Shown one piece after another: positions 7,677 through 54,164 of a stretch of DNA of 64,000 bases. Within the stretch, counting starts at the first letter, position 1, and every line of letters begins with the position of its first letter. The notes below the pieces were generated by a model. That model made no database searches. It saw nothing but the letters and a program-made list of their open reading frames with translations, and was not told the DNA's origin. The position numbers and the translations under genes are program-made. Location: the IMG/VR virus record IMGVR_UViG_3300047322_001237, positions 214,989 through 278,988 of that record. The stretch is one strand, 5' to 3'.

Positions 7677-7678
7677 CA

Positions 7679-8392: not shown

Positions 8393-8407
8393 CGTCGCGC
8401 CTAAACA

Positions 8408-8423: not shown

Positions 8424-8908
8424 TATCCTACACCCTTTTTCGCGGCGCATCGTCTACCACTTAGGGAACCGCTTGGAGAGACAGTTAGTTGCGTGGTGAA
8501 AACCACAAAAAACGTATCATTCATTACGTTTTGGCGCCGTGACTGTCTGCCAACCTCGGCCGACTTCCGGATCACGTCAAAGAACGCTTGCCAGCGGCCA
8601 CTTAGTTCTTTTTCCGTGAAACATTCCCCGCGAGCTGCCGCCGACGCCTTGATTTAGAACAAGTTGGCGCCTTCGAAAATTTGTCCCGAGTGTTTCACGG
8701 GACGTCATTCGAACTTAAGACTACTTCGAGGTTCCACGCCCTCTTCCCCGCCCTGCTTGACCGACAAAAAGTGACAGTACAGCGAAGTATACTTGCTCTG
8801 CCCTTGTTTACAAGCTAGAGTTCGACACAATTCGGTCGTGCGCCGCATTCTTCGGTCGAAGGTGATTTTTCGAAAAACCGAAGAATCCACAACAAAGGGG
8901 AACCTCTC

Positions 8909-10111
8909 GTGAATGCAAGCACTCTGCTCGCCAGCGGCCTGCCGCCGGCGCTTGACTACGCCGCGTCCATGGACACATTGGCTGATGTGTCCGCCCGTGC
9001 CTCGGGTGTTCTAAATCAGATCCGCGATCGGATGCTGGAACCATATCCGCGCAAACGCCCGCCCACGTTCACGAGCGCACAGGTGGCCGGCCTGTGCGGA
9101 CTTGAAAAAATGCGTTTCCAGTATCTGACTACGAAAGGCGATCTCCCCACCGGCACGTCGATTAAAAATGGCAAGAGCAAAGTCTTTACGTTGGAAGAGA
9201 CACTACGGTATATCCGGGCTGTCGGCAATCGCCCGCCGCGACCAGAGAACGCTCCCGGCAAAGTTGTGACGGTGGCCAACTTCAAAGGCGGTGTGGCTAA
9301 GACTACGACGGCCGTCTCGCTCGCTCAGGGACTCACCTTACGCGGTCGTAAGGTTCTCGTTATCGACTGTGATCCCCAAGGCACCGCTACGCAGTTATGC
9401 GGCTTCTCGCCCGAAACGGAAATAGGCGAGGAGATGACGCTCATGCCTTTGATCTACGGCGATGAAACGAGACTGGACTACGCAGTCCAACAAACCTACT
9501 GGCAGGACCTAGACCTGGTCCCGGCGTCTTCCGGTCTCTTTAGCGCTGAGTTTCATATTCCGGGCAAGCTGGCCACCGACCACAAGTTCGAATTCTGGAA
9601 CATCTTGAATCAGGGCCTCGAAGGCCTCAAAGACAAATACGACGCCATCGTCATCGACACTCCGCCATCTCTAAGTTATCTGACGATCAATGCGTTGATG
9701 GCGGCGAACGGACTATTGATGCCCTGCCCGCCCGAGGGGCTCGACTTTGCCAGCTCCACTCAGTTCTGGTTCCTCTTCACCGAAATGTCGAGGCACGTTC
9801 CAGCAATGCGTGAGACGAAAGACTTCGATTTCGTCAATGTCGTGCTCACGAAATCGAAGAGTGACGACCTTTCCGGCGTTGTACGGGGCTGGCTGCAAAA
9901 GGCCTACGGAGATCGAGTCCTTCCGTATGAGATTCCCGACTCCGTCGTCCCGAAGAGCGCATCTGCTCAACTCTCTACCGTCTACGACCTTACCAAGCCC
10001 GAGGGCAGCGTGGCAGCCTACACCCGCTTCAAGGATCCGATGGATCAGTTGGTGAGGCACATCGACTCCCAGTTTGTACAGGCTTGGGCGTCTTCCATGT
10101 TGGAGGTCTAA
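8909..10111 (+). CDS. parA: type Ia plasmid partition ATPase
   Basis: N-terminal HTH extension, deviant Walker A KGGVAKTTT, DCDPQG and IDTPPSL. The start may be the ATG at 8969. Confidence 0.95.
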   Translation: MNASTLLASGLPPALDYAASMDTLADVSARASGVLNQIRDRMLEPYPRKRPPTFTSAQVAGLCGLEKMRFQYLTTKGDLPTGTSIKNGKSKVFTLEETLRYIRAVGNRPPRPENAPGKVVTVANFKGGVAKTTTAVSLAQGLTLRGRKVLVIDCDPQGTATQLCGFSPETEIGEEMTLMPLIYGDETRLDYAVQQTYWQDLDLVPASSGLFSAEFHIPGKLATDHKFEFWNILNQGLEGLKDKYDAIVIDTPPSLSYLTINALMAANGLLMPCPPEGLDFASSTQFWFLFTEMSRHVPAMRETKDFDFVNVVLTKSKSDDLSGVVRGWLQKAYGDRVLPYEIPDSVVPKSASAQLSTVYDLTKPEGSVAAYTRFKDPMDQLVRHIDSQFVQAWASSMLEV

Positions 10112-11106
10112 TGCGCGCCGCTCAAAGACTTAGTGAAAAGATTGGTGACATCGACATCCCAGAACCCGGTCAATCGCCGGCGGCCGGTGATCCGTTTCGT
10201 CCAAGGACGGCACCAGGTGGAGCGCTCGCCTTTCAGCATGCAATGCGCGAGAAGCAGGCCGAGCTCGACGCGATGTCCGCACAGCTGGCCGAACTGCAAG
10301 CTCAGAAGCAGACGAACTCGCCCAGCGGCGTCGAGATTCCCCTCGACCAACTGCATGAAGTCGCAGGTCGCAGACGCTACATGCCGCCGGAAAAGTACAA
10401 TGAATTGCGGGAAAACCTGCGGAACAACAAGCTGATTCAGCTGCCCGTCATTCTGCCACGTGCAGAAGGTGGCTTCGAAATACAGTCGGGACATCACCGG
10501 ATCGACGCTTATCGGGAACTCGGGCGTTCGACCATTCGCTGTGTTCTGGGTGACGCGACGGGCGATGAAGCTGACGACGGCGCGTTCTGGGCCAATCTGA
10601 TGCAGTCGGACCTGACTGACTATGAGAAGTACGTTGGACTGACGCGCGTACATTCGAAACATCCGGAATTGGGCCAAGTCGAGCTAGGCGAGCTCGTCGG
10701 CATTAGCACTTCCCACCTCAACGCCCTGCTCTCTTTCGGTCGTTTGCCTGAGCAGGCCCGCGCGATTCTCGATACCAATAAGGCGATCATGGGCGCGAAC
10801 GCGGCCGCGGCTTTTGCGGCTATCGCGGAGGCCGGCAAGGCGGAGCGGGTTGTGGAAGCGGTACGACGTCTCTCCGAGCGGGAGCTAGATCAGGCGCAGG
10901 CGGTGAAGTTTGCAAAAGCCGTTGAGACGCCCAAGGCAACGAAGCCGGCTGCTGAGTCGTACAAGGTGAAGACCGGAAAGAGTACGTGGTGCGATGTGCG
11001 CAAGACGAAAAACATCATGCGCATCGAGTTCCAGTCCGAAGAGGTGGCCAATGCCGTCCAAGAAGCCATCAAGCAAACCCTCGAGGCGCTCGCCGCAAAG
11101 TCCTAA
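10111..11106 (+). CDS. parB: ParB/Spo0J partition protein
   Basis: GHHR (GxxR CTPase motif) and a central HTH. TAATG overlap with the parA stop. Confidence 0.92.
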   Translation: MRAAQRLSEKIGDIDIPEPGQSPAAGDPFRPRTAPGGALAFQHAMREKQAELDAMSAQLAELQAQKQTNSPSGVEIPLDQLHEVAGRRRYMPPEKYNELRENLRNNKLIQLPVILPRAEGGFEIQSGHHRIDAYRELGRSTIRCVLGDATGDEADDGAFWANLMQSDLTDYEKYVGLTRVHSKHPELGQVELGELVGISTSHLNALLSFGRLPEQARAILDTNKAIMGANAAAAFAAIAEAGKAERVVEAVRRLSERELDQAQAVKFAKAVETPKATKPAAESYKVKTGKSTWCDVRKTKNIMRIEFQSEEVANAVQEAIKQTLEALAAKS

Positions 11107-11180
11107 ACGCTAAGTGCTTGATTCTTTTGATTTCCTTAGTACGGAAAAAGGAGACGGCAGTGAAATAGCTGCTAGAAACA

Positions 11181-11298
11181 CGAAGGCCCCCAGCTGGAAA
11201 CTGAGGGCCTTCGCATAAGTGGGCTTGGCTGGAAACCGTCGCTCACTACACTCCCAAGCTGGAAACTTGGAAGGGTACTTCGTCAACCCCGAGTGTAG
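11181..11298 (+). ncRNA. putative structured repA leader / copy-number control RNA
   Basis: Three contiguous hairpins (11181-11213, 11218-11247, 11247-11277), each with a CTGGAAA loop. Alternative pairing of CTACACTC (11246-11253) with GAGTGTAG (11291-11298). Confidence 0.55.
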
Positions 11299-11357
11299 CG
11301 AATAGCGATCGACAGTCAAGCAAATTCAATCCATTTTTGAGAAATGGACCGCTCGAC

Positions 11358-12446
11358 ATGTCTATCGCGCAACAGCTCGTTGCTGGCGAGGGTGAAACAC
11401 ACCCCGACGATTCAGCAGCCCTCACCGCTTTCCGGTGTGACTCGACAAACCTGCCTTGGGTCATCTTCCGGGCTGCGTTCCGTGCAGCACACATTGAGGA
11501 GATCCCTCCTCGCGCACGTGCGGTTCTTTCCGCCCTCGCCCGCACCGTCGACGCCGCCAAGCCGTTCGCCGCGATCTTCGCTCGTCGTGAACTGCTCACA
11601 GGACGCGCACTGCAATCCATGCGCACCTTCTACCGCAGCCTCGATGACTTGGAGTCCGCCGGTCTAATCGATCGCCGCGCTCAATCCCGCTACGTTGAAG
11701 CCGGTCTCTTCGGTCGTGCCTACATCCACCTCACCGCGCGAGCAGCCGAGCTTCTAGGGCTCGTTGAGTCGATGCAACCGCCCTCACCTGAGCCCGTCGA
11801 ATCTTCGCTTCCGCATCCGTCTGCCAACTTGGCAGACGGTGGAATATATAAGGATCTAAGCCCTTCTGTTTTTCAAAAGAGACAACCGGGGCAAGTGCCT
11901 GAGGATCTCCAGCGTCTGCGGTCCCTGGGTTTTTTTGATTTCTTGATTTTCAAACTCATGCGGGAAGCGCGTGAGCATGGCAAACGTCTCTCGGATGTCG
12001 TGGAAGCAACATGGGACCACCTGAAGCTCGCCAAAGCCCCAATCAACTACCTGCGGAGTCTGCTGCGGGGAACGGTTGATTTCGCTCACCAACTGCGCGC
12101 CAGGATTAACGTCAAAGCCGAGGAGCAGGCTCGGGTGAAGCGCACCTTGGAAGCCGATCAGGTAGCCCGTCAAAGCGCCGGCAAAACGTTCCTAGACGCC
12201 TCGGGGGCACGCAAGTACGTGATCGATGCCGACGGCGAGAACATGGTCGTCTACAACCGTGACGAAGGCATTGGTCGACAAGCCGCGGGTTGGAAAGAAG
12301 GTTTTGCTGCAGCGCTCGCTCGAGGTCAGATCCGTGCGGCGAGCAGCTACGTGCAGCCGGAGCAGGGCAGGGAACGTCCGCCAGTTACAGCACAGGTTCG
12401 GGAACACATCGCGGGACTGCGCAGCCTGCTGGGAGCTCGTCGCTAG
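11358..12446 (+). CDS. repA: plasmid replication initiator (Burkholderiaceae RepA-type, winged HTH)
   Basis: Directly downstream of parAB. HTH-like segment RTFYRSLDDLESAGLIDRR. Internal AT-rich patches near 11841-11960. Confidence 0.8.
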   Translation: MSIAQQLVAGEGETHPDDSAALTAFRCDSTNLPWVIFRAAFRAAHIEEIPPRARAVLSALARTVDAAKPFAAIFARRELLTGRALQSMRTFYRSLDDLESAGLIDRRAQSRYVEAGLFGRAYIHLTARAAELLGLVESMQPPSPEPVESSLPHPSANLADGGIYKDLSPSVFQKRQPGQVPEDLQRLRSLGFFDFLIFKLMREAREHGKRLSDVVEATWDHLKLAKAPINYLRSLLRGTVDFAHQLRARINVKAEEQARVKRTLEADQVARQSAGKTFLDASGARKYVIDADGENMVVYNRDEGIGRQAAGWKEGFAAALARGQIRAASSYVQPEQGRERPPVTAQVREHIAGLRSLLGARR

Positions 12447-12469
12447 TCAGGACTGCTTAGTTTTTGAGC

Positions 12470-12499
12470 AAAAAAAAAAGACGGGTCCGAAGACCCGTC
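12470..12499 (-). terminator. intrinsic terminator with C(UUCG)G loop
   Basis: Minus strand reads GACGGGTC-TTCG-GACCCGTC followed by about ten Ts; it ends the lipoprotein transcript. Confidence 0.9.
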
Positions 12500-12504
12500 A
12501 AAAG

Positions 12505-13263
12505 TCAGTTGGCGAGCTGCCAGCCGTTATCCGTCAACAGCATGTAATACGTTGCCGTGTAACTGTAGCGCACGTCGTCGCTGTATTGACTCGGTTTAAG
12601 GTCAGTTGCCAGCATTGTACTAACCAGATTCGGACTGACATTCGGACATTCGGCGACAATATTTCGAGAAAACACGGATCGGATATTCTGTGCTTCTACC
12701 ACTTTGTCGTGATACGCCGTTGTCGTATCCCATGCCTTCAGCGCAGCGGCCTCAACGTCAGGATGCTGCTTGAGGTACATGTCCGAGTAGACATTGAGGG
12801 GATAGCTCACGGCGGCAGCGAGTCGGTCGTCACCTGGCTGCGACTCGCGAATCTGCGTGTTATAGGCGGCCTGCTGATCCTCAGAGAGGGACGCCCGAAG
12901 CGCATCGACCCCATCTGACACGTCTTTTGCGTATTTCTGCAGCGACGCATCCGCCTCGTCCCGTGCCTCTTTATGCGATTTAAGATACTCATCCAAGTCG
13001 GTCAAGTATCGGACGTTGGCACGTGCGGGTTTCATCACCACTTCGGCAGCCATCTGCATTTCGTAATGTCTGTCGTCGACCTTCACGCCATTGACCTTGT
13101 CGAACTTGGTTATCTTGAAGAGATCACAGTCGGCTATATGGAGATTCTGCTCGACGCCCTTGCGTACATCCGACTCGGACGGGGACTGAGAACAAGCAGC
13201 CAAGGTGGCAACCACTGAGGCGCACAGAGCCAGCCGGCCCACGCCGGTGCGCTGAATAAACAT
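12505..13263 (-). CDS. predicted lipoprotein
   Basis: Signal peptide with LAAC lipobox (MFIQRTGVGRLALCASVVATLAAC). Start set at ATG 13263. Confidence 0.8.
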   Translation of the reverse strand: MFIQRTGVGRLALCASVVATLAACSQSPSESDVRKGVEQNLHIADCDLFKITKFDKVNGVKVDDRHYEMQMAAEVVMKPARANVRYLTDLDEYLKSHKEARDEADASLQKYAKDVSDGVDALRASLSEDQQAAYNTQIRESQPGDDRLAAAVSYPLNVYSDMYLKQHPDVEAAALKAWDTTTAYHDKVVEAQNIRSVFSRNIVAECPNVSPNLVSTMLATDLKPSQYSDDVRYSYTATYYMLLTDNGWQLAN

Positions 13264-13355
13264 GATTCTTTTCCTTTCTAATTGAAAACGTTTGCCCAGA
13301 CGGGCAGGGGAGACGGGAGTCGGAAGCCGCCGCATCTTAGACGAATATCGGCAGC

Positions 13356-26338: not shown

Positions 26339-27067
26339 TTACCAGGGGATGTCGTCCGACACTTCTTCGGTCGAACCGCCGCCACCGCCGCCACCGTAGC
26401 TGTTGCCACGATTGCCGCCGCCGCCACCGTTGTTACGGTTGTAGCCACCACCGCCACCGTTGCGGTTACCGCCGCCGTTGTCCTTCTTCTCCGGCTCGAC
26501 GTACTCGGTCACGAGGAGGTGCGCCAACATGTTTTCCATGAGGCGGACCCAACCACGTGCGAAGAGCGCCGACTGCTCGCCGTTGCTGTACTGCTCGCCG
26601 GTCTTGTGGAAGAGCGTGTGGAAGTCACTCTTACCGAACGGGAACTTGATGCGGGGCCGATCACGTGCGGTTACCGAAACCCACACGACGCCTTCCGCAT
26701 CCTTGCCGAAGTGCAGTTCCGACTGCACGACCGGCGATTCGCTGCGCTTGCCGCCCGGGAAGATGAAGTTCTTGTTCTCGATCTTCACCTTGTCTTCCTG
26801 ACCTGCCGGGCCGTCGATGATCTTCGCCAGCGCGCCGAGGAAAACCATGAACACTTGCGCGTCGAGGTTCGCGGTGATCTTGCCGTACTGCTTCGACTCG
26901 CCCTGATCGTCCGGGTCGTTCGTGTAAACCGTAATGCGGGGATTGTTCGAGAAGAGGTTGACTTGCAGGCTCGAGTACTTGCCCTTAGCCGTGGGGCAGG
27001 GAGTCGACAGATGCAGCTTGCGGTTGTCGAATGCAATCTTCTTTCGTTCTTTGCGGAAGTCGCTCAT
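26339..27067 (-). CDS. ChmC-like nucleic-acid-binding protein
   Basis: About 242 aa directly upstream of the gp68-like gene. Folded N-domain, then a Gly/Asn-rich tail ending EEVSDDIPW (SSB-like acidic tip). Confidence 0.68.
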   Translation of the reverse strand: MSDFRKERKKIAFDNRKLHLSTPCPTAKGKYSSLQVNLFSNNPRITVYTNDPDDQGESKQYGKITANLDAQVFMVFLGALAKIIDGPAGQEDKVKIENKNFIFPGGKRSESPVVQSELHFGKDAEGVVWVSVTARDRPRIKFPFGKSDFHTLFHKTGEQYSNGEQSALFARGWVRLMENMLAHLLVTEYVEPEKKDNGGGNRNGGGGGYNRNNGGGGGNRGNSYGGGGGGGSTEEVSDDIPW

Positions 27068-27153
27068 TTTCTTTGTAATCCGATGTTCTGTGGGGTGACA
27101 AACGATACCCACGATGAATAAAAAATCCCCAGTCGAATCGTGTTTCCCCGCAC

Positions 27154-31556: not shown

Positions 31557-33086
31557 TTAATGAATAGCCGGAACCGGTTCCGCAGCCGGCGGCGCTTCGG
31601 GAATCGCTGCCATGCGACGCAGAACTTCCGGATCGGCTTGTTCCGGTTCGTCCCAGTGAATCCAGTTGCTGATCGTCGCGATCACGGTCTTGGGCATCGA
31701 CAGATTGCGCGACACGGTACGCGGTGCGTTCATGTCGAACACGCTCTGATGCGGTGCCAGTCGATACAGCTCTTCGGCCGTCACGAAGTCGAGCGACAAC
31801 GTTGCGTTGAGCTGGTCGCCGTCGAAGTCCGCGTTGAAGCCGACCACCGACAGAATGCTCATCGAGATCGTCGGGATCGCCGGTTCGCTCTTCACCTTCG
31901 TGATGAACATGGCCTGCGCCGATGAACGCGCCAGCGACGGATTGCGTTGCAGCACGATCGGGACGCCCTTGTACGGGGAACGCTCGATGAAGTCGTGGAA
32001 CATCTGGTCGAGCATCGGACAGTACTTCGCCGCGTGGTCGAGCAGGTACGCATCCGCTTCCGACGGCGTCATGCCTTGACGCATCATGCGGTTCTTCAGA
32101 TGCAACTCGAACACGGCAATGCCGATGCCCCACGGGATGTGAACTTCGTCGTAGTCGTGGCGATCCGTGAGCGAACTGATCACCGCACGGAAGCTGAAAT
32201 GTGCCCGCGTACCATAGACGTGCTTGCGGAAGATGCCTTCCTTCTTCGCCAGCACCGTGCGCATCGTCTCGTCGTAATACTGCGACGTCTGGATGATCAT
32301 CTTGATCGTGCGGTTCTCTTTCACTCGTTCGGAGTGGACGGAGAGCGGCGCGTCAATGCCGACCATCATCAGAATCGCGTCCACAGCAACAGGAGCGGTC
32401 GCGTCCGTGTACGAGCCGTGATTCGTGTCTTCCAACACGAGCAGTGAACGGTTCGGCAGCGGCAGGTATTTCGAGAAGACGCAATCGCGCTGTTCTTGCA
32501 GCAGCTGCTTGAGCGGAGCGAGCTTCTTCTTGCTGTAGAACTTCAGATTGAACATGAAGTCCATGATCTGATCGAAGTTCTCGACGAAGTTGTTGTAGCC
32601 GCGCGGGATGTTCGCCTTGCGGATGTAGTCCATCACAGGCGGCTCTTTCACGGTCGCCTTGTAATTGACGTCGACGATCCAGCGCATCACGTCGAAGTTG
32701 CTCTTCTCGAAGCGCTCCGCGATCATCGTCCAGACCGTCGGATTGATCAGGGCCGTGACACCCTTCGGTGCGCGCAGCCAAATCAGCGGTTCGAGATCGC
32801 GCTGATGCGGTGCCGTCACTTCGGTGTGGCAGTCCGGGCATTCCACGGCCTTGATGTACTTCCCGTCACCGAGCTTATCGACGCCGACCGTGTTGCCGCA
32901 GTCACACGAGGGGATGTTCGAGAGCAGATCCGAGTTGATCAGATCGTACTTCGTGAAAATCAGGTTGTAGATGTGTTCTTTTTCCTCTTCGGAAGTATCC
33001 GAGAGGTCGTTGATGATGATCGGTTCCTTGGACGAGAAGTGATTGAACACTTCGTCTTGGTTCACGAGTTGGAGGAATACGCCCAC
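31557..33086 (-). CDS. non-virion RNA polymerase beta' N-terminal/catalytic subunit (phiKZ gp55-like)
   Basis: Catalytic NADFDGD motif, Zn-finger CDCG...CPDC and QRNPSL; immediately downstream of chimallin. Confidence 0.95.
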   Translation of the reverse strand: MGVFLQLVNQDEVFNHFSSKEPIIINDLSDTSEEEKEHIYNLIFTKYDLINSDLLSNIPSCDCGNTVGVDKLGDGKYIKAVECPDCHTEVTAPHQRDLEPLIWLRAPKGVTALINPTVWTMIAERFEKSNFDVMRWIVDVNYKATVKEPPVMDYIRKANIPRGYNNFVENFDQIMDFMFNLKFYSKKKLAPLKQLLQEQRDCVFSKYLPLPNRSLLVLEDTNHGSYTDATAPVAVDAILMMVGIDAPLSVHSERVKENRTIKMIIQTSQYYDETMRTVLAKKEGIFRKHVYGTRAHFSFRAVISSLTDRHDYDEVHIPWGIGIAVFELHLKNRMMRQGMTPSEADAYLLDHAAKYCPMLDQMFHDFIERSPYKGVPIVLQRNPSLARSSAQAMFITKVKSEPAIPTISMSILSVVGFNADFDGDQLNATLSLDFVTAEELYRLAPHQSVFDMNAPRTVSRNLSMPKTVIATISNWIHWDEPEQADPEVLRRMAAIPEAPPAAEPVPAIH

Positions 33087-33524: not shown

Positions 33525-35492
33525 TTACTGGTTGGACCAGCGGCTGAAGCCAGCGCGGGCGCCGTACTGCTGTTGTTGCGGGTGCGCGAAGCCGCGGTTG
33601 AACACCGAGCCGTTCATCGAGCCCGTATCCAGACCAGCCGACACTGCGTACGGGTTCACCGCGCGCTCGTACTGGTTCAGATCCGTCATCGGGGCGATGG
33701 TGCGCACCGACAGACCCGTGTCCTTGCATGCGTTCAGCAGCGCGACGATGAACGCCGGCTCGAAAGTCACGCGGCGTGCGAAGCCGGTGAACTCGACGTT
33801 GTTCTTGCCGAGGATGCCTTCGATGATGTGCTTGCGCTTCGCCAGACGAACTTGCAGGTCCAGGTTCGTGCGTGCGAACGTATCCGACCATTCGCGTGCA
33901 ACTTCCGGATCGCGATCGCCGACCATGTTGAGCACGGCCAGGTAGTCGATCTCGCGGAGGTCGCGCTTCACGCCGTGACGGTCGACGTACCAACCCAGGT
34001 GGATGCGGTTGAATTCGTCGGACGCCACGCGGCCGCCGGCCTGGAAGTAACGGCTGAAGTTGCCGTGCGTGAGCACGTTCGCCGCGCGGATGATGATTTC
34101 ATTCGCTTTCTGCCAGTTGTTGCCGCTCAGCTCAGCAGCTGCTGCGAAGATGCCGTTGAACCAGGTCTGCGGACCGCACTCGGGCACGTCCAGCGAGAGG
34201 ATGAGCTTCGGCGTGATGACCGAGCCAACCAGACGCAGGAGGTGGTCGCTCGTCTGACCTTGACCGCGCTGGAACGCATCCGACTTCGTGTCGACGCGCG
34301 AGCCGAAGCCGTTCGGGTTCTTCTCGAAGTTCGCTTCGATGCCGATGGCGCCGATGTCCTTCCAGTCGATTTCCGCGCTGTTGCTCATCGGTGCCGGACG
34401 GAATGCCTCGACCCATGCGTGGTTGTCGGCCAGCGTGAACGCCGTCACGAGCGCCAGCAGCTGCGCCGGAATCGTGAGCAGCTTGACCGACTCGAGATCG
34501 GTCATCACGAAACGCGGACGGTAGCGCTTGAACTCGTCCGGCGACGACGGCTGAGCCGTCTGCTGGACCCACGGGTCGAAGCGTTGCGTCTGCTGTTCGG
34601 TCGGCGCCCACACGAGGTCCATGTAGCCGCTGATGCGCGAGATCTGCGACACACGCTGGGTCACGCCTTGCTGGCCCGGGATTTCCTGCCCGCCTGCGCG
34701 GAAGTCGATGACGATGTCCGAACGGATCGGTGCGCCGACCATGTCACGCGACTGGCCGTTGCCGAACGTCGGCTGAACGGTCAGCGAGTTCTCTTGCTCG
34801 ACGGTGCCCAGGTCCAGGTCCTGGAAGCCGCCCGGCTGACGCACTTCGAGTTCGGTCTGGCACGCCGTTGCAGCGTTCGCTGCCAGCTCGTGAACCAGCG
34901 TCACGTCGTCGACGTTGAAGTCACGCGGCACCACGCATGCGTCCACCGGCCAAATCGGCATGCCCGGGAACGTGCGCGACACGGCGGCGAGCACTTCGTC
35001 CGACAGCGTCTTGTTGTTGACGTCGCCGGTCACGCGCAGGATTTCCGTGTTCGTGTTGTTGATCATCTGGTACGCGACCTGCAGCGGCTCGCTCGAGCCT
35101 TCCAGAATCAGGGTGTGACATGCCACGCCCGTTTCCTTGTTCATCAGGTCACGCATCGCGACGACGATCACCGACTTCACGAGCGACTGCGTGTTGTTGT
35201 AGTCGATCGGGATGAGCGTGACTTCGTAGCTCTTGTCGACGCCGGCGAACACTTCGGTCAGTGCCTTCTCGAGTTTCGTGATGACTTCGCTCTGCGGATT
35301 GCGACCCATGGCGGCACGCGAGAGGCTGCCCAGGTCGGACAGGCGGGTGCGTTGCGTCGGGCGCTGCGCTGCGCTCGGGGCGGCTTGCTGCTGGGCTTGC
35401 GCCGACTGCTCCATCTGACGGCTGAATGCAGCGCCCATCGAGGTTTCTGCTGCTGCGCCTTGCTTGCTGCCGTTGGTGTTGTTCACTGCCAT
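33525..35492 (-). CDS. chmA: chimallin, phage nuclear shell protein
   Basis: 655 aa directly upstream of the NADFDGD subunit. Segments FVMTDLE, LSLDVPECGPQTW, IDYLAVLN and GFARRVTFEPAFIVAL match my recollection of ChmA; disordered termini. Confidence 0.85.
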   Translation of the reverse strand: MAVNNTNGSKQGAAAETSMGAAFSRQMEQSAQAQQQAAPSAAQRPTQRTRLSDLGSLSRAAMGRNPQSEVITKLEKALTEVFAGVDKSYEVTLIPIDYNNTQSLVKSVIVVAMRDLMNKETGVACHTLILEGSSEPLQVAYQMINNTNTEILRVTGDVNNKTLSDEVLAAVSRTFPGMPIWPVDACVVPRDFNVDDVTLVHELAANAATACQTELEVRQPGGFQDLDLGTVEQENSLTVQPTFGNGQSRDMVGAPIRSDIVIDFRAGGQEIPGQQGVTQRVSQISRISGYMDLVWAPTEQQTQRFDPWVQQTAQPSSPDEFKRYRPRFVMTDLESVKLLTIPAQLLALVTAFTLADNHAWVEAFRPAPMSNSAEIDWKDIGAIGIEANFEKNPNGFGSRVDTKSDAFQRGQGQTSDHLLRLVGSVITPKLILSLDVPECGPQTWFNGIFAAAAELSGNNWQKANEIIIRAANVLTHGNFSRYFQAGGRVASDEFNRIHLGWYVDRHGVKRDLREIDYLAVLNMVGDRDPEVAREWSDTFARTNLDLQVRLAKRKHIIEGILGKNNVEFTGFARRVTFEPAFIVALLNACKDTGLSVRTIAPMTDLNQYERAVNPYAVSAGLDTGSMNGSVFNRGFAHPQQQQYGARAGFSRWSNQ

Positions 35493-49225: not shown

Positions 49226-50224
49226 TTACAACACCAGGCCGGTATCGGTAGCCTGATCAGCACTGCTGGAGATGCCTCCCTTGCGCAGACGGGCAGCCGT
49301 CTGCTCGTTCATGTCGTCCAGCACTCGGTGCAGGTCGGCGGCGACGTCGGCGAATACGCCGTCCGACGTCACGAAGTGACACGGCGCCTCGAGGTCGAGT
49401 TGGTCGGAAGCACCGTCGAGGTAGCCGACGTATTGCACTTCCGGACGCAGCGACAGGTTCGGATCGACACCAGTGGTCGTAAGCGTCGCGATGCTGATGA
49501 GGTTGCCGATCTTGCCGAGATTCGTCGCGTTCAGATCTTCGATGAGCGTAAGTGCGGTGAGCATCGGCTTGTAGGATGTGACCTTCTGGTAATGCAGCCA
49601 GTGGTACAGATCCTTCGAGTCGAGCTCACGGTTGCGACGCGAGAACAGCAGGCAGAGGGCCGCGACGATATGCTGAATGCGCTTATCGACGACCGAGCGC
49701 GTCATTTCCGCGCTGTTCTGCAGGTACGTCACGACTACCGGCTCCTGACGCACCGACGCGATCTGATCGTACGACTTGAGCGTGTTCAGCGTGTTTTCGG
49801 TGTACTTCTTCGTGCTGTCGTCGCCGACGCAGATGACGACGGTCGGATAGTCCTTTGCGAGGAGTTCCGAGACGATCGACGGCGCGATCACAGAACCGGA
49901 ACCGCCACCGCCCGACGACAGGACGATGTTCAGGTCGACCGGCTTGAAGGTCTGCAGGATGTCGCGCACGCGCTCGCTGATGGCGCCGTGATTTTCGCGG
50001 CGCACTTGACCCGAGCCGTCGAGGCCGTCAATCAGATAGACGCTTTCCGCCTTGATGTCCGAATGAAGGTTCGACTTCGACGTGTCGATGTACACGACGT
50101 CCAGTTGCGCGAACGTTTCATCGCTGCTTTTCGCGACGTCCTCGACCTTGTGGCCCATGTTAATGCCAGCGCCGCCGCACGCGTAGAGTCGCACGCGACC
50201 GCGTTCACGTTCATGCGTAGTCAT
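49226..50224 (-). CDS. phuZ: phage tubulin PhuZ
   Basis: CGGAGIN, IDTS, tubulin signature GGGGSGS and a short acidic C-tail (DQATDTGLVL). About 332 aa; ATG at 50224 after AAGGA. Confidence 0.93.
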   Translation of the reverse strand: MTTHERERGRVRLYACGGAGINMGHKVEDVAKSSDETFAQLDVVYIDTSKSNLHSDIKAESVYLIDGLDGSGQVRRENHGAISERVRDILQTFKPVDLNIVLSSGGGGSGSVIAPSIVSELLAKDYPTVVICVGDDSTKKYTENTLNTLKSYDQIASVRQEPVVVTYLQNSAEMTRSVVDKRIQHIVAALCLLFSRRNRELDSKDLYHWLHYQKVTSYKPMLTALTLIEDLNATNLGKIGNLISIATLTTTGVDPNLSLRPEVQYVGYLDGASDQLDLEAPCHFVTSDGVFADVAADLHRVLDDMNEQTAARLRKGGISSSADQATDTGLVL

Positions 50225-50553: not shown

Positions 50554-51357
50554 ATGAATCCCATTACCAAGGCCCTCGCAGACATCAAGTTCCGCATTCC
50601 GCCCGAGATCCTGCACACCGTTTTCGTTCAGCGCGTCGAGCGTTGGCGCGATACACCGAAGAGCATCGACGACCAGATCATGAATTTGGTCATGCGTCCT
50701 CGCGTTTTGATCGATTGCAACCTGGTGGGCGGCACCGAGATCTGGATTTGTCTAGATGGCTTGTGCGAGAGCGGTGGCAGCATCTACGAATCGGTCTATC
50801 GCATCCCGAAGAAGATGACCAACGGCCGGACGATCATGTCCGTGCTCAACGTCTCCTTCGCCGATCCGTCGCGTGTGTCGGCAGCTGGCATTGCAGCGAA
50901 CGGCCAGAACAACATGATGTTGCAGGCAGGACAGGCCGTGATGGATGCGATGGGGATGATTCCCCAGACGTCGACCGCTCGGCTAGAACTGATCGGCGAG
51001 AACGTGGTGCTGGTGCGAGATGTGATGACGATGCCCGCCAATGCGTACCTGCGCTGCACCGTGGCGAACGACGAGAATCTGAACAACATCCAATTGCGCA
51101 GCTATCTCGCCTTCGTGAAGCTCGTCGAGTATGCAGTCAAGTCCTACATCTACAACACCTACATCGTGCAGTTGGATATGGGTGAGCTGCGCGGCGGGCA
51201 AACGCTCGGAAAGATCAAGGAGATCGTCGAGAGTTACGCGGACGCGGAAGAATTGTACGAAACGTACTTGCGCGAGAAATGGAGAAAGGTTGCTTTCATG
51301 AACGACCAAGAGTCGTTTAACAGGTACCTTAGACTCATGATCGGCGGGAATCGATAA
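50554..51357 (+). CDS. conserved phiKZ-like virion protein (probable)
   Basis: 267 aa, MNPITKALADIKFRIPPEIL; divergent from phuZ. Confidence 0.7.
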   Translation: MNPITKALADIKFRIPPEILHTVFVQRVERWRDTPKSIDDQIMNLVMRPRVLIDCNLVGGTEIWICLDGLCESGGSIYESVYRIPKKMTNGRTIMSVLNVSFADPSRVSAAGIAANGQNNMMLQAGQAVMDAMGMIPQTSTARLELIGENVVLVRDVMTMPANAYLRCTVANDENLNNIQLRSYLAFVKLVEYAVKSYIYNTYIVQLDMGELRGGQTLGKIKEIVESYADAEELYETYLREKWRKVAFMNDQESFNRYLRLMIGGNR

Positions 51358-51405
51358 CAGCATAGAGGCCCGGGGATTCCCCGGGCCCTTATGACGCTTG
51401 GTCAG

Positions 51406-52053
51406 TTACGCAGCGGCTTCGCTCGTTGCGCGCACCGAACGGTTGAAGTCGTCGGGCAGCAAGAACGTGAAGACAGCGGCGCTGCGAGGGCACGCCTCGC
51501 TAGCAGTGGGTTCAACGAACAGATCGATCGTACCCAAGTCGCCGAACGTCCACGTGACCATGATCGAGTGCGAGTGGGCGAGCAGGGTGCGGCGAAGTTC
51601 GTAGAAGAGAGTAGCGAACTGAAGCGTCCGCTTTTCCCCGCCCTGGCCGTTGCCCAGCTGGTACTCGCCTTCGAAGACCGTGCTGCTGACCAGGTTGAGA
51701 GCCGACTCCAGTTCCTTGATCGCTTGAGACACGCTCTCGTAATAGCTGTGATCGTCGATACCTTGAGTCGACATATGCAGGGTCGCGAACGGCATTGCTT
51801 GATCGCCCAGCAGCGCGACGTGCTCGTTGACATCGGGCAGCAGGCCGCCTTTCTCGTTCGGCAGCACGTGCACACCGTAGGTCGCCGAGAAGCCCGGGTG
51901 CGACGACAGAATGCGCAGCGTCTCACGCCATTCGGCGAGGAACTTCTGCTCGGCTGTGTCGCCCATGTGCTGGTAGGCGATCGACTTCAGGAACGGACGA
52001 TCTTCCAGCGGGAAGGTGTAGCCGTGGAACAGTAGGCTATGTGCGTTTTTCAT
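51406..52053 (-). CDS. hypothetical protein
   Basis: 215 aa, downstream of the XRE gene. Confidence 0.65.
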   Translation of the reverse strand: MKNAHSLLFHGYTFPLEDRPFLKSIAYQHMGDTAEQKFLAEWRETLRILSSHPGFSATYGVHVLPNEKGGLLPDVNEHVALLGDQAMPFATLHMSTQGIDDHSYYESVSQAIKELESALNLVSSTVFEGEYQLGNGQGGEKRTLQFATLFYELRRTLLAHSHSIMVTWTFGDLGTIDLFVEPTASEACPRSAAVFTFLLPDDFNRSVRATSEAAA

Positions 52054-52063: not shown

Positions 52064-52696
52064 TTACTTGCTTGCCGTCGGGACCAGCTCGAGCGTGAGC
52101 GTGAAGCCCAGTGCGTCGACGAGTTGATAGAGGCGGTCAACCGTCAGTGCCTGACGCCCGGTCTCGATCTCGCTGATGGTCGACGGCGCCAGGGACGTCT
52201 TCGCAGCCAGTTGCGATTGCGTGAGGCGCGCCGTGACACGCAGTTCGCGCAGCGTGCGGCCGACGTCCTTGCAGCTCATCGAAATTTCACGGACCGCCGA
52301 CTTCACGACCTTCTTCTTTGCGAATGCATCCTTCGCGACCTTGCGACGCTTCACGTTCGCGCCGGCGACACCGCGCTTTGCAACCGCGTCAGCGATCTTG
52401 GCCGGCGTGTTCGCTTCCGGCACGGCTGGTGCGGCCGCGGCGGCGGTGGTTGCCGGCTTTGCGACGAGATCCTTGAACGCGGCGTTCGCATCGGCCGTCT
52501 TCTGGGAGAGCGACTGCTTCGCGGCGGGCTTCTTGGCTGTGACTGTCTTCGCGACCGGCTGCTTCACGGCGACGCTGGCTTTCGCCGGCTTCGCGACGGT
52601 CTTCTTCACAGGTGCCGTCACCGGAGCCGGTGCGGTCTTGACTGCTGCCGGTGCCTTCGCGACAACTGCGGTCTTCGTGGTTTTCTTCGTGGCCAT
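52064..52696 (-). CDS. histone-H1-like Lys/Ala-rich domain fused to an XRE/Cro-CI HTH
   Basis: About 135 aa of K/A/T/P/V-rich sequence, then LRELRVTARLTQSQLAAKTSLAPSTISEIETG (classic XRE HTH). Confidence 0.85.
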   Translation of the reverse strand: MATKKTTKTAVVAKAPAAVKTAPAPVTAPVKKTVAKPAKASVAVKQPVAKTVTAKKPAAKQSLSQKTADANAAFKDLVAKPATTAAAAAPAVPEANTPAKIADAVAKRGVAGANVKRRKVAKDAFAKKKVVKSAVREISMSCKDVGRTLRELRVTARLTQSQLAAKTSLAPSTISEIETGRQALTVDRLYQLVDALGFTLTLELVPTASK

Positions 52697-52733: not shown

Positions 52734-53645
52734 TTAGAAATGTGCTTCGGAATCTTTCGGATCGCTCGCTTGCCTGGGGCCGAGTTTGAGCGCACGGATG
52801 CCTGCAGCAAGCTTCGCCGCTTGCGCGATCGCGCCGCGGAAGACTGCCTTTTCGATGAACTCGTGTGGCAGGCAATGCGCGCTCTCTGCTTCGCTCTGCT
52901 CGACTGCCTGATCGCAGAGGAGGGCAGCGGCTTCGACTGCGTTATCGATCATCAGCGCGTTCTCAGCGTTGCTGTCCTGCGGCTGCTTCAGGACCGCGGA
53001 GAGGCTTTGGTGCACATGACCGAGTGCCTTGTTGTAGCCGCGTTCGTAGTCGCCGTAGATCTTCGAACACTCCTTCGGGAGCGCGGCCAGGAGAGTCTGG
53101 CGAGTGGCACGGATCGGATTGGCGTCGAGCGCCTTCGCGACGCGCTCGAGTCGGTTGGCAACGTTGTTGCGATTGTGATCGTCGCGGCCGTCCTGCTTCG
53201 TGTAGCCGAGCAGATCGATGAATGTGCTCAGGTCGATCTTGCCGAACATCGTGAGCTTGAGCAGGCCCGCCTCCCAGAAGACGGGTGACGCGTGCAGCTT
53301 GAAGCTCGGAATCGGCAGCTTGCCGTCAGCACGAACAGATTCGGGAACGTCGATGACATCATTCGACTCGTACATGGCGACCGTGCCGATGACCGTGCCG
53401 AGCATGATGGCGCGCTTGCCGTTCTTGAACGACCCGGTGGCGTAGGTGCCCGGGTCCAGGATGGGATCCCTTTCCGAGGGTTCGAGCTTCAGGCGATCGT
53501 TCTCGTCGAGCTCGAGTGGTGCAATCTTTTTGAGGTCGATCTCTTTGAACTTCTTGTCGAAGTATTCGAGATACGGCTCGATCTGGTCGCGCAGCTGCTG
53601 AGGCAGGTCAGCGAGAGCCGCCTTGGGTTTTGCGTATGGGATCAT
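52734..53645 (-). CDS. hypothetical protein
   Basis: About 303 aa from ATG 53645; the ORF track extension crosses homopolymer tracts and is probably non-coding. Confidence 0.7.
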   Translation of the reverse strand: MIPYAKPKAALADLPQQLRDQIEPYLEYFDKKFKEIDLKKIAPLELDENDRLKLEPSERDPILDPGTYATGSFKNGKRAIMLGTVIGTVAMYESNDVIDVPESVRADGKLPIPSFKLHASPVFWEAGLLKLTMFGKIDLSTFIDLLGYTKQDGRDDHNRNNVANRLERVAKALDANPIRATRQTLLAALPKECSKIYGDYERGYNKALGHVHQSLSAVLKQPQDSNAENALMIDNAVEAAALLCDQAVEQSEAESAHCLPHEFIEKAVFRGAIAQAAKLAAGIRALKLGPRQASDPKDSEAHF

Positions 53646-53790
53646 GAGGGTAGGGTGGGTGATGACACATACCCTACGGTCCCCCAGTATTTCTTCTCCG
53701 CAGACGGGCATAAGGACCAGTCCGCGGCCGGTCGAATTTTCGGTCCCCCCTCCCCCCAGAAAAAGCGGGGGTTTTTCCTGCAATAGATAG

Positions 53791-53818
53791 AGGAGAGGGG
53801 ACCTTCGTCCCCTCTCCT
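53791..53818. terminator. 12-bp perfect hairpin AGGAGAGGGGAC-CTTC-GTCCCCTCTCCT
   Basis: Lies in a hairpin- and homopolymer-rich intergenic region. Confidence 0.55.
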
Positions 53819-54164
53819 AGGATCGACGGCCCCCCTCCCCCAAAACCTATCTATTCTTTATAAATTGAAGGTCACTTTTTCTTGGTGTTGTTGTGTGTGA
53901 CTTTCGATGCAAAGGATGCGGATAGAACGGTATTTTTTTATTCAGTTGGTGGTATGTATTTAAGACGGTCCTCTCTGGGACCGTCAATTAGCGAGAGATG
54001 ACCAACTTTAGTTTTTTTAGATTTTTGCATCGAAAGAAGGCATAGACAGACAACACGAACAACAACAAGAACAGAATCAACGAAAAGGGCAAAGACTTAA
54101 AAGCAAAACCTCTAAAGGGGCGGCCGGGGCGCGGCGGCGGGATTGGCGATGCGCCAGCAAGACC

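What the first reader, a model, noticed from the sequence alone, without database searches (positions are those of the whole stretch)
52064..52696. Histone-H1-like tail fused to an XRE repressor HTH inside the phage core
Seen: about 135 aa of Lys/Ala/Pro-rich, H1-like sequence followed by a canonical Cro/CI-type HTH, with no C-terminal S24 peptidase domain. Inference: the best candidate in the window for a lysogeny repressor, or a DNA compactor for the phage nucleus or dormant plasmid, combining sequence-specific binding with condensation. Without an autocleavage domain, induction would need an antirepressor.
Basis: partly seen in the sequence, partly recalled or inferred. Interest (0 to 1): 0.6.

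Follow-up and report, generated by a model that had tools for sequence, protein, structure and literature searches.

The report
Basic-tailed HTH regulator of jumbo phage
A nucleus-forming giant phage of soil Burkholderia-type bacteria carries one small accessory gene that joins a long, positively charged, floppy tail to an ordinary DNA-reading domain; it is a real and unusual regulator, but nothing yet shows that it is the switch that keeps the phage dormant.

Summary
Window 52064-52696 (minus strand) encodes a 210-aa protein. It has a ~140-aa disordered Ala/Lys/Val/Thr/Pro tail (net +24, pI 10.8) and a canonical XRE helix-turn-helix (Pfam HTH_31 1e-12; AF2 pLDDT 82-91), with no S24 or other C-terminal domain.

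It is the only XRE HTH and the only H1-like ORF in a complete 279-kb chimallivirus (chimallin, PhuZ, nvRNAP) from rhizosphere metagenomes. A relative lies in the Caballeronia arationis LMG 29324 assembly. The fusion is confined to this clade: 2 clusters among 1.84 billion representatives.

It is not a core gene. It sits in a hypervariable slot beside PhuZ/DUF7484, in a three-gene cassette behind a conserved structured leader and a phage-type TATGCC signal. Sister phages have an empty slot, or a basic-tailed protein with a different domain.

The proposed GGTGATATATCACC operators belong to an oriented 9-copy motif upstream of chimallin, nvRNAP beta' and PhuZ. The motif is conserved in relatives that lack the gene, so the sites are probably early promoters.

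The gene co-occurs with ParA in 2 of 2 testable genomes. However, one ParA-bearing relative and three relatives from IMG genome-derived records lack it.

Best reading: an accessory phage DNA-binding regulator with an affinity-boosting tail. A dormancy-repressor role is possible but unsupported.

The parts
52064..52696 (-). KAP-HTH gene, 210 aa (P0001): polybasic disordered tail plus XRE HTH
   Evidence: ORF and translation; Pfam; homologues of the same architecture; 6 synonymous / 3 non-synonymous differences in natural variants
52277..52696 (-). Tail, residues 1-140: Ala/Lys/Val/Thr/Pro-rich, net +24, predicted disordered
   Evidence: Composition; pLDDT about 40; invariant Lys/Ala/Pro positions across lineages; no DNA tandem repeat; HC2 profile below cut-off
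52451..52519 (-). Conserved motif inside the tail, residues 60-82 (K-x-S-L-x-Q-K..A-N-x-A-F-K-x-L..K-P-A); weak amphipathic helix
   Evidence: Invariant K60 S62 L63 K66 N71 F74 L77 K80 A82; helix 63-78 in the model at pLDDT about 55
52274..52432 (-). Lineage-specific 53-residue basic insertion (residues 89-141), absent from the 181-191-aa homologues
   Evidence: Alignments A1 and A8
52094..52264 (-). XRE/Cro-C1-type HTH domain, residues 145-201, followed by a short C-terminal strand
   Evidence: HTH_31 1e-12 and HTH_3 8e-12; pLDDT 82-91; Foldseek TM 0.70-0.84 (by target) to C.BclI, C.AhdI, HipB, ClgR; helices 2-3 are 71-93% identical across lineages
52734..53645 (-). geneA, 303 aa (starts MIPYAKP), first gene of the cassette; function unknown; absent from the C. 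arationis relative
   Evidence: ORF; 58% identical in L003, missing in L008; no Pfam, PHROG, NCBIfam or PADLOC hit; paralogous domain fused to basic tails in L051-L053
51406..52053 (-). geneC, 215 aa; starts 10 nt after the KAP-HTH stop; function unknown; chimallivirus-specific fold
   Evidence: 73-80% identical in L003/L008 and about 33% in L051-L053; AF2 pLDDT 80, pTM 0.81; no PDB fold match; BFVD matches only uncharacterised proteins of RP12, Noxifer, Eowyn
51361..51393 (.). G+C-rich inverted repeat between the convergent geneC and DUF7484; likely bidirectional terminator closing the cassette
   Evidence: the repeat finder I1: 16-nt arms, 88% complementary
53706..53712 (-). TATGCCC after a hairpin, about 60 nt upstream of the geneA start. 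Variant of the genome-wide hairpin + yTTATGCCG signal (exact TATGCCG in L003 and L008)
   Evidence: phiKZ late promoters are TATG with G as the start site (PMC4666361)
53790..54060 (-). Conserved structured leader. It is the most conserved part of the island: 87-91% nt identity overall and nearly invariant in its core
   Evidence: Alignments A3 and A7; 13-nt perfect long-range inverted repeat and an inner hairpin with 3 compensatory pairs; no Rfam hit and no tRNA; found only in the three KAP-HTH phages among the loci searched

Best explanation
The gene encodes a real, lineage-specific accessory DNA-binding protein of a nucleus-forming jumbo phage (chimallivirus) of Caballeronia-type hosts. A canonical XRE helix-turn-helix is the C-terminal module. 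It most resembles small dimeric regulators such as restriction-modification controller proteins, HipB and ClgR. A 140-residue disordered polybasic tail precedes it.

Shown: the architecture; its restriction to this phage clade; its place in a hypervariable slot next to PhuZ/DUF7484; its co-linear cassette (geneA, KAP-HTH, geneC) behind a conserved structured leader and a phage-type TATGCC signal; purifying selection at short range; and conservation of the recognition helices against indel-rich evolution of the tail.

Inferred: the protein binds a conserved specific site as a dimer through the HTH. The tail adds strong non-specific electrostatic DNA affinity (sliding, fuzzy contacts, possibly bridging). 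The protein would then act as a high-occupancy regulator of a few targets during infection. The most likely target is its own conserved leader (autoregulation of the accessory cassette); host DNA is an alternative. It is transcribed by a phage RNA polymerase rather than kept on by the host polymerase in a silent prophage. The GGTGATATATCACC sites are early-promoter elements, not its operators.
For: Architecture and fold. Only XRE HTH and only K/A/P-rich basic ORF in the genome. The genome is a chimallivirus (chimallin 6e-100, PhuZ 3e-92, nvRNAP beta' 3e-145). The family is confined to this clade: 8 word-search homologues; only 2 full-length representative clusters of 1.84e9, all other hits HTH-only; none in INPHARED phages or PLSDB plasmids; 1 of 69 Caballeronia species genomes. 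Variable slot: present in window, L003 and L008; replaced by tail+geneA-like proteins in L051-L053; empty in L054 and L056; absent in FLC9. Cassette, leader and phage-type signal. No sigma-70 match in the leader. Conservation pattern: helices 2-3 are 71-93% identical, tail 52-63%, against neighbouring core genes at 79-96%. Coding constraint. Motif reinterpretation. A known precedent for an N-terminal disordered region that aids DNA recognition by an XRE HTH is HigA2 (PMC11006873).
Against: No operator was identified. No repeated palindrome stands out in the genome. The leader is conserved as a whole, so a binding site cannot be singled out. Dimerisation was not established. No RNA data exist for this phage, so the timing of expression rests on a motif whose role (promoter, terminator part, early or late) is itself inferred. 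Whether the protein enters the phage nucleus is unknown; if it does not, phage DNA is not its target. The co-occurrence with ParA (2 of 2 testable, with both complete ParA-less relatives lacking it) fits the rival dormancy reading better than this one.
Confidence: 0.45

Rival explanations
1. Carrier-state (plasmid-prophage) repressor. In cells where the phage is kept as a low-copy plasmid by its parAB-rep module, the protein would sit on the early promoters (the GGTGATATATCACC-type sites before chimallin, nvRNAP beta' and PhuZ). With its tail it would coat the nearby DNA, keep the lytic cascade off and give immunity. Induction would need an antirepressor or proteolysis, because no S24 domain is present.
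For: It is the only XRE HTH in the genome. A parAB + rep-like + imuA module of Burkholderiaceae megaplasmid type is present. A relative lies in the assembly named 'isolate LMG 29324' of C. arationis. Both testable KAP-HTH genomes have ParA, and both complete relatives without it lack ParA and any XRE HTH. The sites are rare (3 in 279 kb against 0.03 expected), partly palindromic, and placed before key early genes. Persistent chimallivirus infections are documented in bacterial isolates (bioRxiv 10.1101/2024.12.31.630880).
Against: The site motif is oriented, longer than a dimer operator, and conserved in six relatives that lack the gene, including as a perfect palindrome in L054. G428 has a 90%-identical ParA but an empty slot. 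Three of the four relatives whose records derive from IMG genome entries lack the gene. The cassette carries a phage-type TATGCC signal and no sigma-70 match. No cro-like partner and no integrase were found. The recognition helices are conserved between lineages, so there is no heteroimmunity pattern.
Confidence: 0.2
2. Mainly non-specific nucleoid-type protein. The tail would coat and compact DNA, with the HTH as a weak anchor. The DNA could be phage DNA inside the nucleus or for packaging, or the host chromosome in the cytoplasm (host shut-off or nucleoid disruption).
For: Net +24 over 140 disordered residues, with composition like bacterial H1-like tails. Sister phages carry a comparable basic tail on a different, non-HTH domain in the same slot. 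This suggests that the tail has a function of its own.
Against: Lys content is only 19% and the HC2 profile is far below its cut-off. The HTH recognition helices are the best conserved part of the protein, which argues for a specific target. The gene is dispensable in close relatives, which is unlike a general packaging or compaction factor. The tails of the sister proteins show no detectable sequence homology to this one.
Confidence: 0.15
3. Antitoxin-like or partner-neutralising regulator of the HigA2/HipB kind. The disordered N-terminal region would bind and neutralise the product of a neighbouring gene (geneC or geneA), and the complex would autoregulate the cassette.
For: The closest sequence and fold matches include HipB, HigA2 and the Y4mF antitoxin subfamily. 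HigA2 has an N-terminal disordered region plus a C-terminal HTH (PMC11006873). geneC starts 10 nt after the KAP-HTH stop and always accompanies it.
Against: All antitoxin family scores are below their cut-offs (couple_hipB 41.9 against 71.65; HigA 16.3 against 47.7). geneA and geneC match no toxin, defence or other family. The geneC fold matches only uncharacterised chimallivirus proteins. geneC also occurs next to tail+geneA-like proteins that have no HTH. The tail is far longer and more basic than known antitoxin disordered regions (my own knowledge).
Confidence: 0.08
4. RNA- or ribosome-binding factor of the MBF1 kind (basic N-terminal part plus Cro/C1-type HTH), acting on translation rather than on DNA.
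For: JGI named two homologues aMBF1. There is a weak TIGR00270 match (E 0.0022). The conserved structured leader RNA lies upstream.
Against: TIGR00270 scores 17.8 bits against a cut-off of 110. Foldseek rows to ribosome-bound MBF1 have rmsd about 19 A. The name comes from a generic HTH match.
Confidence: 0.03

Closest known systems
Small dimeric XRE-family regulators (restriction-modification controller proteins C.BclI/C.AhdI/C.Esp1396I, HipB, ClgR)
   Same: The helical Cro/C1-type HTH passes the Pfam cut-offs. Foldseek TM by target is 0.70-0.84 with rmsd 0.7-3.3 A. Like HipB, it has a short C-terminal strand after the last helix.
   Different: Those proteins are 65-100 aa with no long extension or only a short one. 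This protein carries a 140-aa polybasic disordered N-terminal tail. No cognate partner (methylase/endonuclease, HipA) is nearby. No family-specific cut-off is reached.
HigA2 antitoxin of Vibrio cholerae (N-terminal disordered region + C-terminal XRE HTH; the disordered region also gives fuzzy DNA recognition, PMC11006873)
   Same: The order of modules is the same (disordered N-terminus, HTH C-terminus). The PDB sequence match to HigA2 has E 0.0015. It is a precedent for a disordered region that helps an XRE HTH on DNA.
   Different: The HigA2 disordered region is short and folds on its toxin, whereas the tail here is 140 aa with net charge +24. No HigB/RelE-like gene is adjacent. The HigA profile is below its cut-off.
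Bacterial histone-H1-like tails (Chlamydia Hc2, Pseudomonas AlgP, PhaF/PhaM, mycobacterial HupB tail, Bordetella BpH1; from my own knowledge)
   Same: Ala/Lys/Pro-rich composition, disorder and high positive charge. Such tails are common in Burkholderiales, the likely host order.
   Different: The Pfam HC2 match is 15.1 bits against a cut-off of 40. Lys is 19%. There is no tandem repeat unit. The tail is fused to a sequence-specific XRE HTH. No similar gene was found in 69 Caballeronia genomes other than the phage copy.
Lambda CI / LexA-type lysogeny repressors and N15 CB-type phage-plasmid repressors
   Same: XRE-type HTH in a phage that also carries plasmid partition genes. It is the only such HTH in the genome.
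   Different: It has no S24 peptidase or oligomerisation domain. There is no divergent cro and no immunity-region layout. The gene lies in a cassette with a phage-RNAP-type signal and is absent from several carried relatives.
Basic-tailed slot proteins of sister chimalliviruses (L051, L052, L053; 370-473 aa)
   Same: They occupy the same genomic slot between geneC and geneA and lie on the same strand. Each has an N-terminal Lys/Ala-rich basic region beginning M-(A)-T-(K/T/N).
   Different: The C-terminal module is a geneA-like domain, not an HTH. No significant sequence similarity of the tails was found.

Membership tests
XRE / Cro-C1 HTH superfamily (Pfam HTH_3, HTH_31) | Profile match above the curated gathering score | tested here: met
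   HTH_31 48.6 bits (cut-off 27) and HTH_3 45.5 bits (cut-off 23), residues 145-201
XRE / Cro-C1 HTH superfamily (Pfam HTH_3, HTH_31) | Compact helical HTH fold | tested here: met
   AF2 helices at 142-155, 160-166, 171-178 and 186-196 with pLDDT 82-91. Foldseek TM by target 0.70-0.84 to C.BclI, C.AhdI, HipB, ClgR
XRE / Cro-C1 HTH superfamily (Pfam HTH_3, HTH_31) | Binding of a (pseudo)palindromic operator | tested here: inconclusive
   No repeated palindrome in the genome. The only conspicuous palindrome class is better explained as a promoter element
CI/LexA-type lysogeny repressor | C-terminal S24 peptidase / autocleavage domain | tested here: not met
   No Pfam match beyond the HTH. The protein ends at residue 210
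CI/LexA-type lysogeny repressor | Immunity-region layout: divergent cro-like second HTH gene, lysogeny module (integrase or equivalent) nearby | tested here: not met
   Single XRE HTH in 279 kb. No tyrosine integrase. parAB lies 42 kb away. The neighbours are co-directional genes of unknown function
CI/LexA-type lysogeny repressor | Presence tracks the dormant or carried lifestyle among relatives | tested here: inconclusive
   Concordant with ParA in 4 of 5 testable genomes. However, absent from G428 (ParA 90% identical) and from three of the four relatives whose records derive from IMG genome entries
Histone H1-like nucleoproteins (Pfam HC2 PF07382; linker histone) | Profile match above the gathering score, or a linker-histone globular domain | tested here: not met
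   HC2 15.1 bits against a cut-off of 40. No linker-histone match
Histone H1-like nucleoproteins (Pfam HC2 PF07382; linker histone) | Non-specific DNA condensation | not testable with these tools
   Needs purified protein. Only composition (net +24) and predicted disorder are available
Type II antitoxins HipB / HigA / Y4mF | Family-specific profile above its cut-off | tested here: not met
   couple_hipB 41.9 against 71.65; HipB 23.2 against 79; HigA 16.3 against 47.7
Type II antitoxins HipB / HigA / Y4mF | Adjacent cognate toxin (HipA kinase, HigB/RelE) | tested here: not met
   geneA and geneC have no Pfam, PHROG, NCBIfam or PADLOC match. The geneC fold matches only uncharacterised chimallivirus proteins
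MBF1 / aMBF1 | Family profile above its cut-off | tested here: not met
   TIGR00270 17.8 bits against a cut-off of 110

The most novel reading that the evidence does not exclude
The protein is the dormancy (carrier-state) repressor of a nucleus-forming jumbo phage that lives as a partitioned plasmid. It would bind at or near the early promoters of chimallin, nvRNAP beta' and PhuZ, and its polybasic tail would spread over the flanking DNA. This would be the first regulator shown to hold a chimallivirus in a silent, heritable state.
Probability: 0.15. Interest if true: 0.85.

Novelty: new variant of a known kind. Interest (0 to 1): 0.45.

Why it matters
In the review and transcription papers I consulted, chimalliviruses are described as running their gene expression with their own two RNA polymerases, and no classical transcription factor is named. 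The phiKZ authors themselves raised the idea that an unknown phage DNA-binding protein switches promoter classes (PMC4666361).

A lineage-specific XRE regulator with a histone-tail-like extension is a concrete, testable candidate for such a factor. It sits next to PhuZ in phages that also carry plasmid partition genes and turn up in a bacterial genome assembly. Alternatively, it may be a dormancy or host-directed factor.

The recurrence of a basic tail on different domains in the same slot also raises a further question: does the tail act as a portable DNA-anchoring or targeting module in phages whose DNA is walled off from the cytoplasm?

If it is only an autoregulator of an accessory cassette, it is a modest addition to the XRE family.

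Tried and rejected
- **Homodimer prediction.** Complex prediction on residues 135-210 in two copies gave 'no verdict' (median 0.42, one control 0.27). It is not used as evidence either way.
- **Operator search.** Enumeration of repeated palindromes (half-sites of 6-7 nt, spacers of 0-8 nt) over the whole genome found nothing usable. An imperfect dyad just upstream of geneA (53650-53677) is not conserved in L003 or L008.
- **GGTGATATATCACC as operator.** Rejected as the primary reading.
- **Rfam and tRNA scans of the leader.** No hits.
- **Positional equivalent in the nearest cultured phage.** Burkholderia phage FLC9 (PhuZ 42% identical) has no HTH among ten neighbouring ORFs and no geneC homologue.
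- **Homology of this tail to the tails of the L051-L053 slot proteins.** BLASTP E values of 1.2 to above 10. Only positional and compositional analogy remains.
- **Function of the neighbours.** The Atlas search gave a weak SMI1/KNR4-like lead for geneC (0.89-0.91, within the noise range stated by the tool) and nothing for geneA. The geneC model has no PDB match.
- **Expression evidence.** No RNA run holds the locus; all holders are rhizosphere, root or soil DNA metagenomes.
- **Whether the C. arationis phage has the parAB module.** Unresolved. Its two phage contigs end at the module's borders. The collinear 11.6-kb contig C145 shares only a 349-bp 94%-identical stretch with one of them.
- **AT-rich AATAAAAA sites as early promoters.** They are mostly the T-tracts of terminators on the other strand.
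Full report
**1. The observation**

On the minus strand an ORF runs from ATG 52696 to the stop at 52064-52066 and gives a 210-aa protein, P0001.
- Residues 1-140 are 29% Ala, 19% Lys, 14% Val, 9% Thr and 8% Pro, with net charge +24 and pI 10.8. Residues 141-210 have ordinary composition.
- Pfam HTH_31 (1e-12, 48.6 bits, cut-off 27) and HTH_3 (8e-12, 45.5 bits, cut-off 23) cover residues 145-201. No other domain is found, and the protein ends nine residues later.
- PHROGs places the C-terminal part in transcriptional repressor/regulator families.
- AlphaFold2 on the family alignment gives a confident helical HTH (pLDDT 82-91 for residues 141-200). Residues 1-140 are disordered (pLDDT about 40), apart from a weak helix at 63-78.
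- Foldseek matches only the HTH. The best matches are restriction-modification controller proteins, HipB, ClgR and the N-terminus of Stl, with TM by target 0.70-0.84. The PDB sequence search agrees.

The feature is not a chance low-complexity frame.
- It is the only basic K/A/P-rich ORF among 962 ORFs of at least 80 aa in the genome.
- It is the only XRE HTH in the genome.
- Its homologues share many invariant tail positions.
- Near-identical rhizosphere variants keep the ORF length and show 6 synonymous against 3 non-synonymous best-supported differences.

'H1-like' holds for composition only. The HC2 profile scores 15.1 bits against a cut-off of 40, and the DNA has no tandem repeat.

**2. 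The genome it sits in**

The window is the last 64 kb of a 278,988-bp IMG/VR virus record with terminal repeats, estimated complete.
- It is a chimallivirus. It has a nuclear shell protein (33525-35492, phrog_4795, 6e-100), an nvRNAP beta' fragment (31557-33086, 3e-145), PhuZ tubulin (49226-50224, 3e-92) and DUF7484 (50554-51357).
- The nearest cultured phage by PhuZ is Burkholderia phage FLC9, at 42% identity. No nucleotide match exists in INPHARED.
- The locus occurs in rhizosphere, root and soil DNA metagenomes. No RNA run holds it.
- A relative (chimallin 91% identical) lies on contigs of the Caballeronia arationis isolate LMG 29324 assembly. It was the only hit among 69 Caballeronia species genomes and 401 sampled Burkholderiaceae genomes.

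**3. Distribution of the fusion**

- The word search found eight homologues of 181-214 aa, all with the same architecture.
- The exhaustive profile search of 1.84 billion representatives found only two full-length clusters. Every other hit matched the HTH alone, and many were tandem-HTH proteins.
- Nothing beyond generic HTH matches was found in INPHARED phages. Nothing was found in PLSDB plasmids.
- The fusion is therefore confined to one small clade of chimalliviruses.

**4. The locus is a variable slot, not core**

In the window, in L003 (a metagenomic 80-kb contig) and in L008/L018 (C. arationis), the order is: leader, [geneA], KAP-HTH, geneC, then convergent DUF7484, then PhuZ.
- geneA is missing in C. 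arationis.
- Protein identities between the window and these two phages are DUF7484 93-96%, PhuZ 79-85%, geneC 73-80%, geneA 58% and KAP-HTH 45-47%.
- Within KAP-HTH, aligned tail positions are 52-63% identical between lineages. The HTH is 63-73% identical and helices 2-3 are 71-93% identical. The low overall figure comes from indels in the tail and a 53-residue basic insertion special to the window's lineage.
- More distant relatives (DUF7484 68-77% identical) differ in slot content.
  - L054 and L056 have an empty slot.
  - L055 has geneA only.
  - L051-L053 carry geneA and geneC. Between them sits a 370-473-aa protein with a Lys/Ala-rich basic N-terminal region fused to a geneA-like domain.
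  - None of these six records holds the KAP-HTH family anywhere.
  - The tails of the L051-L053 proteins are not detectably homologous to this one.
- FLC9 has neither the gene nor geneC.

**5. Signals around the cassette**

- The 400 nt upstream of geneA are the most conserved part of the island, at 87-91% nt identity overall and nearly invariant in the core.
- They fold into a long-range helix built on a perfect 13-nt inverted repeat. This encloses a hairpin with three compensatory pairs. Rfam and ARAGORN find nothing.
- About 60 nt before the geneA start lies a hairpin followed by CCTTATGCCC. L003 and L008 have the exact CTCTTATGCCGG.
- TATGCCG occurs 54 times in the genome. TATGCC[C/G] occurs 68 times, 33 of them directly after a hairpin.
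- In phiKZ the late promoters of the non-virion polymerase are TATG, with G as the start site (PMC4666361).
- In some places the motif faces a convergent gene, so it may partly belong to terminators (my reading).
- Either way, the cassette carries the phage's own punctuation. The sigma-70 scan finds no match in the leader.
- The cassette ends at a G+C-rich inverted repeat shared with DUF7484.

**6. The proposed operators**

GGTGATATATCACC with up to 2 mismatches occurs three times in the window, and nowhere else in the genome. The sites are at 26226, 33193 and 50508, against 0.03 expected. The same three positions are kept in the C. arationis phage.
- The sites are part of a longer, asymmetric motif: TCAnGnAGGTGATAT(A/G)T, then about 12 nt, then TTTCAAyC.
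- There are nine genomic copies, all on the plus strand.
- The five in the window lie upstream of minus-strand genes. These are chimallin (motif at 35567), nvRNAP beta' (33193), phrog_3209 (26226), the gene starting at 21002 (21080) and PhuZ (50508).
- The PhuZ/DUF7484 copy is conserved in six relatives that lack KAP-HTH. In L054 it is a perfect palindrome.
- Reviews describe exactly such a bioinformatically visible, about 10-nt AT-rich motif before the early operons of RNAP-encoding jumbo phages (PMC7598289).

I conclude that these are early-promoter elements. A repressor that evolved to sit on them cannot be excluded, but nothing requires it.

**7. Link with plasmid genes**

- Window 5500-13270 holds ImuA (214.9 bits), ParA, ParB and a rep-like gene.
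- The module is 66-70% identical in nucleotides to partition/replication modules of Caballeronia and Burkholderia megaplasmids.
- The ParA query matched no chimallivirus among the phage records listed; the best matches were 27-35% identical ParAs of small phages and phage-plasmids.

| Genome | KAP-HTH | ParA | Other XRE HTH |
|---|---|---|---|
| Window genome | present | present | none |
| G424 (L003 contig) | present | present, only 46% identical | none found with HTH_31 |
| G425 (complete) | absent | absent | none |
| G426 (complete) | absent | absent | none |
| G428 (52% complete) | absent, slot empty | present, 90% identical | unrelated HTH_31 gene elsewhere |
| C. arationis phage | present | unresolved | not searched |

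- The C. arationis case is unresolved because its two phage contigs end at the borders of the module.
- Four relatives come from IMG/VR records whose identifiers look like IMG genome entries rather than metagenome entries. Only the C. arationis one has the gene.
It is negative for necessity.

**8. Neighbours**

- geneA and geneC match no family in Pfam, PHROGs, NCBIfam or PADLOC.
- The geneC model is good (pLDDT 80, pTM 0.81). It matches no solved structure and only uncharacterised proteins of other chimalliviruses: RP12 twice, Noxifer and Eowyn.
- This speaks against a toxin-antitoxin pair of a known kind.

**9. Mechanism I commit to**

The protein is a sequence-specific XRE regulator, probably dimeric.
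- Its disordered polybasic tail raises non-specific DNA affinity and residence time, as shown for the much shorter disordered region of HigA2 (PMC11006873).
- It is made from a phage-type transcription unit during infection.
- It acts on a small conserved target set, most plausibly its own leader, or on host DNA.
- Shown: architecture, distribution, context and constraint.
- Inferred: dimerisation, the role of the tail, timing and target.
- Confidence is 0.45. Rivals: dormancy repressor 0.2, nucleoid-type compactor 0.15, antitoxin-like 0.08, MBF1-like 0.03.

**10. Novelty**

- The HTH is an ordinary member of the XRE superfamily.
- The fusion to a long H1-like tail, its restriction to one chimallivirus clade, and its place in a slot where sister phages hang a basic tail on another domain make it a new variant of a known kind.
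- My literature searches found no description of such a protein. They found no chimallivirus with a partition system either. The one survey of persistent jumbo phages found ParB-profile hits without ParA.

**11. Conduct**

- Read laying was given 2,801 letters.
- No alternative genetic code was used.

Noticed in passing
window 5500-13270 (ImuA 7679-8575 minus; ParA 8909-10111 plus; ParB-like 10084-11106 plus; rep-like 11337-12446 plus): A plasmid-type partition/replication module sits inside a complete chimallivirus genome. It is 66-70% nt identical to modules of Caballeronia/Burkholderia megaplasmids. The ParA query matched no chimallivirus among the phage records listed. ParA alleles are shuffled against the phage backbone. 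G428 has 90% ParA identity but only 70% DUF7484 identity. G424 has 46% ParA identity but 96% DUF7484 identity. This is the pattern expected of incompatibility-driven exchange. It suggests that these nucleus-forming phages really live as plasmids.
   Followed up: partly
L018/L008 = NZ_FCOG02000011.1 (C. arationis LMG 29324, contig of 143,740 bp); also L054, L055, L056: Close relatives of this jumbo phage lie in a bacterial genome assembly: C. arationis 'isolate LMG 29324', with chimallin 91% identical. Three further IMG/VR records with genome-type identifiers also hold relatives. This fits reports of persistent chimallivirus carriage. In C. arationis the phage is split over two contigs (C339, C275). 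They end exactly where the window has its parAB module.
   Followed up: partly
window 53790-54060, minus strand: A roughly 270-nt non-coding element is nearly invariant in three phages whose flanking proteins are only 45-87% identical. It has a perfect 13-nt long-range inverted repeat (CTTTCGATGCAAA / TTTGCATCGAAAG, 110 nt apart), an inner hairpin with three compensatory pairs, and a second strong hairpin at 53791-53818. There is no Rfam family and no tRNA. It could be a structured RNA, a leader, or a DNA element.
   Followed up: partly
whole genome; window copies at 3850, 14460, 21542, 33451, 47563, 55919, 57718, 58874 and others: The signal 'G+C-rich hairpin followed by yTTATGCCGt', often then a T-run, is the most over-represented word in the genome. 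TTATGCCGT occurs 23 times against 1 expected. TATGCCG occurs 54 times. It contains the TATG of phiKZ late promoters. In some places it faces a convergent gene, so it may be a combined terminator/promoter punctuation mark.
   Followed up: partly
window 21080, 26226, 33193, 35567, 50508; genome 9799, 84112, 124919, 180821: An oriented motif, TCAnGnAGGTGATAT(A/G)T followed about 12 nt later by TTTCAAyC, has nine copies, all on the plus strand. In the window they lie upstream of minus-strand genes including chimallin, nvRNAP beta' and PhuZ. This is the candidate early (virion RNAP) promoter of this phage lineage. It is conserved in relatives down to 68% DUF7484 identity.
   Followed up: partly
L051 8209-9321 (minus), L052 8482-9795 (minus), L053 8252-9673 (minus): Sister phages carry, in the same slot, proteins of 370-473 aa. 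Each has a Lys/Ala-rich basic N-terminal region, a shared VVNGVP motif and a C-terminal domain paralogous to geneA. The basic tail therefore recurs on different cargo domains at one genomic position.
   Followed up: partly
window 51406-52053 (minus): geneC gives a confident model (pLDDT 80, pTM 0.81) with no match among solved structures. It has matches to two paralogous uncharacterised proteins of Ralstonia phage RP12 and to proteins of Noxifer and Eowyn. This is a chimallivirus-specific fold family of unknown function.
   Followed up: partly
window 26339-27112 (minus): A 257-aa protein (phrog_3284, unknown function) ends in a long Gly/Asn-rich low-complexity tail (GGGNRNGGGGGYNRNNGGGGGNRGNSYGGGGGGG). 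It lies between the phrog_3209 gene and a conserved gene block.
   Followed up: no
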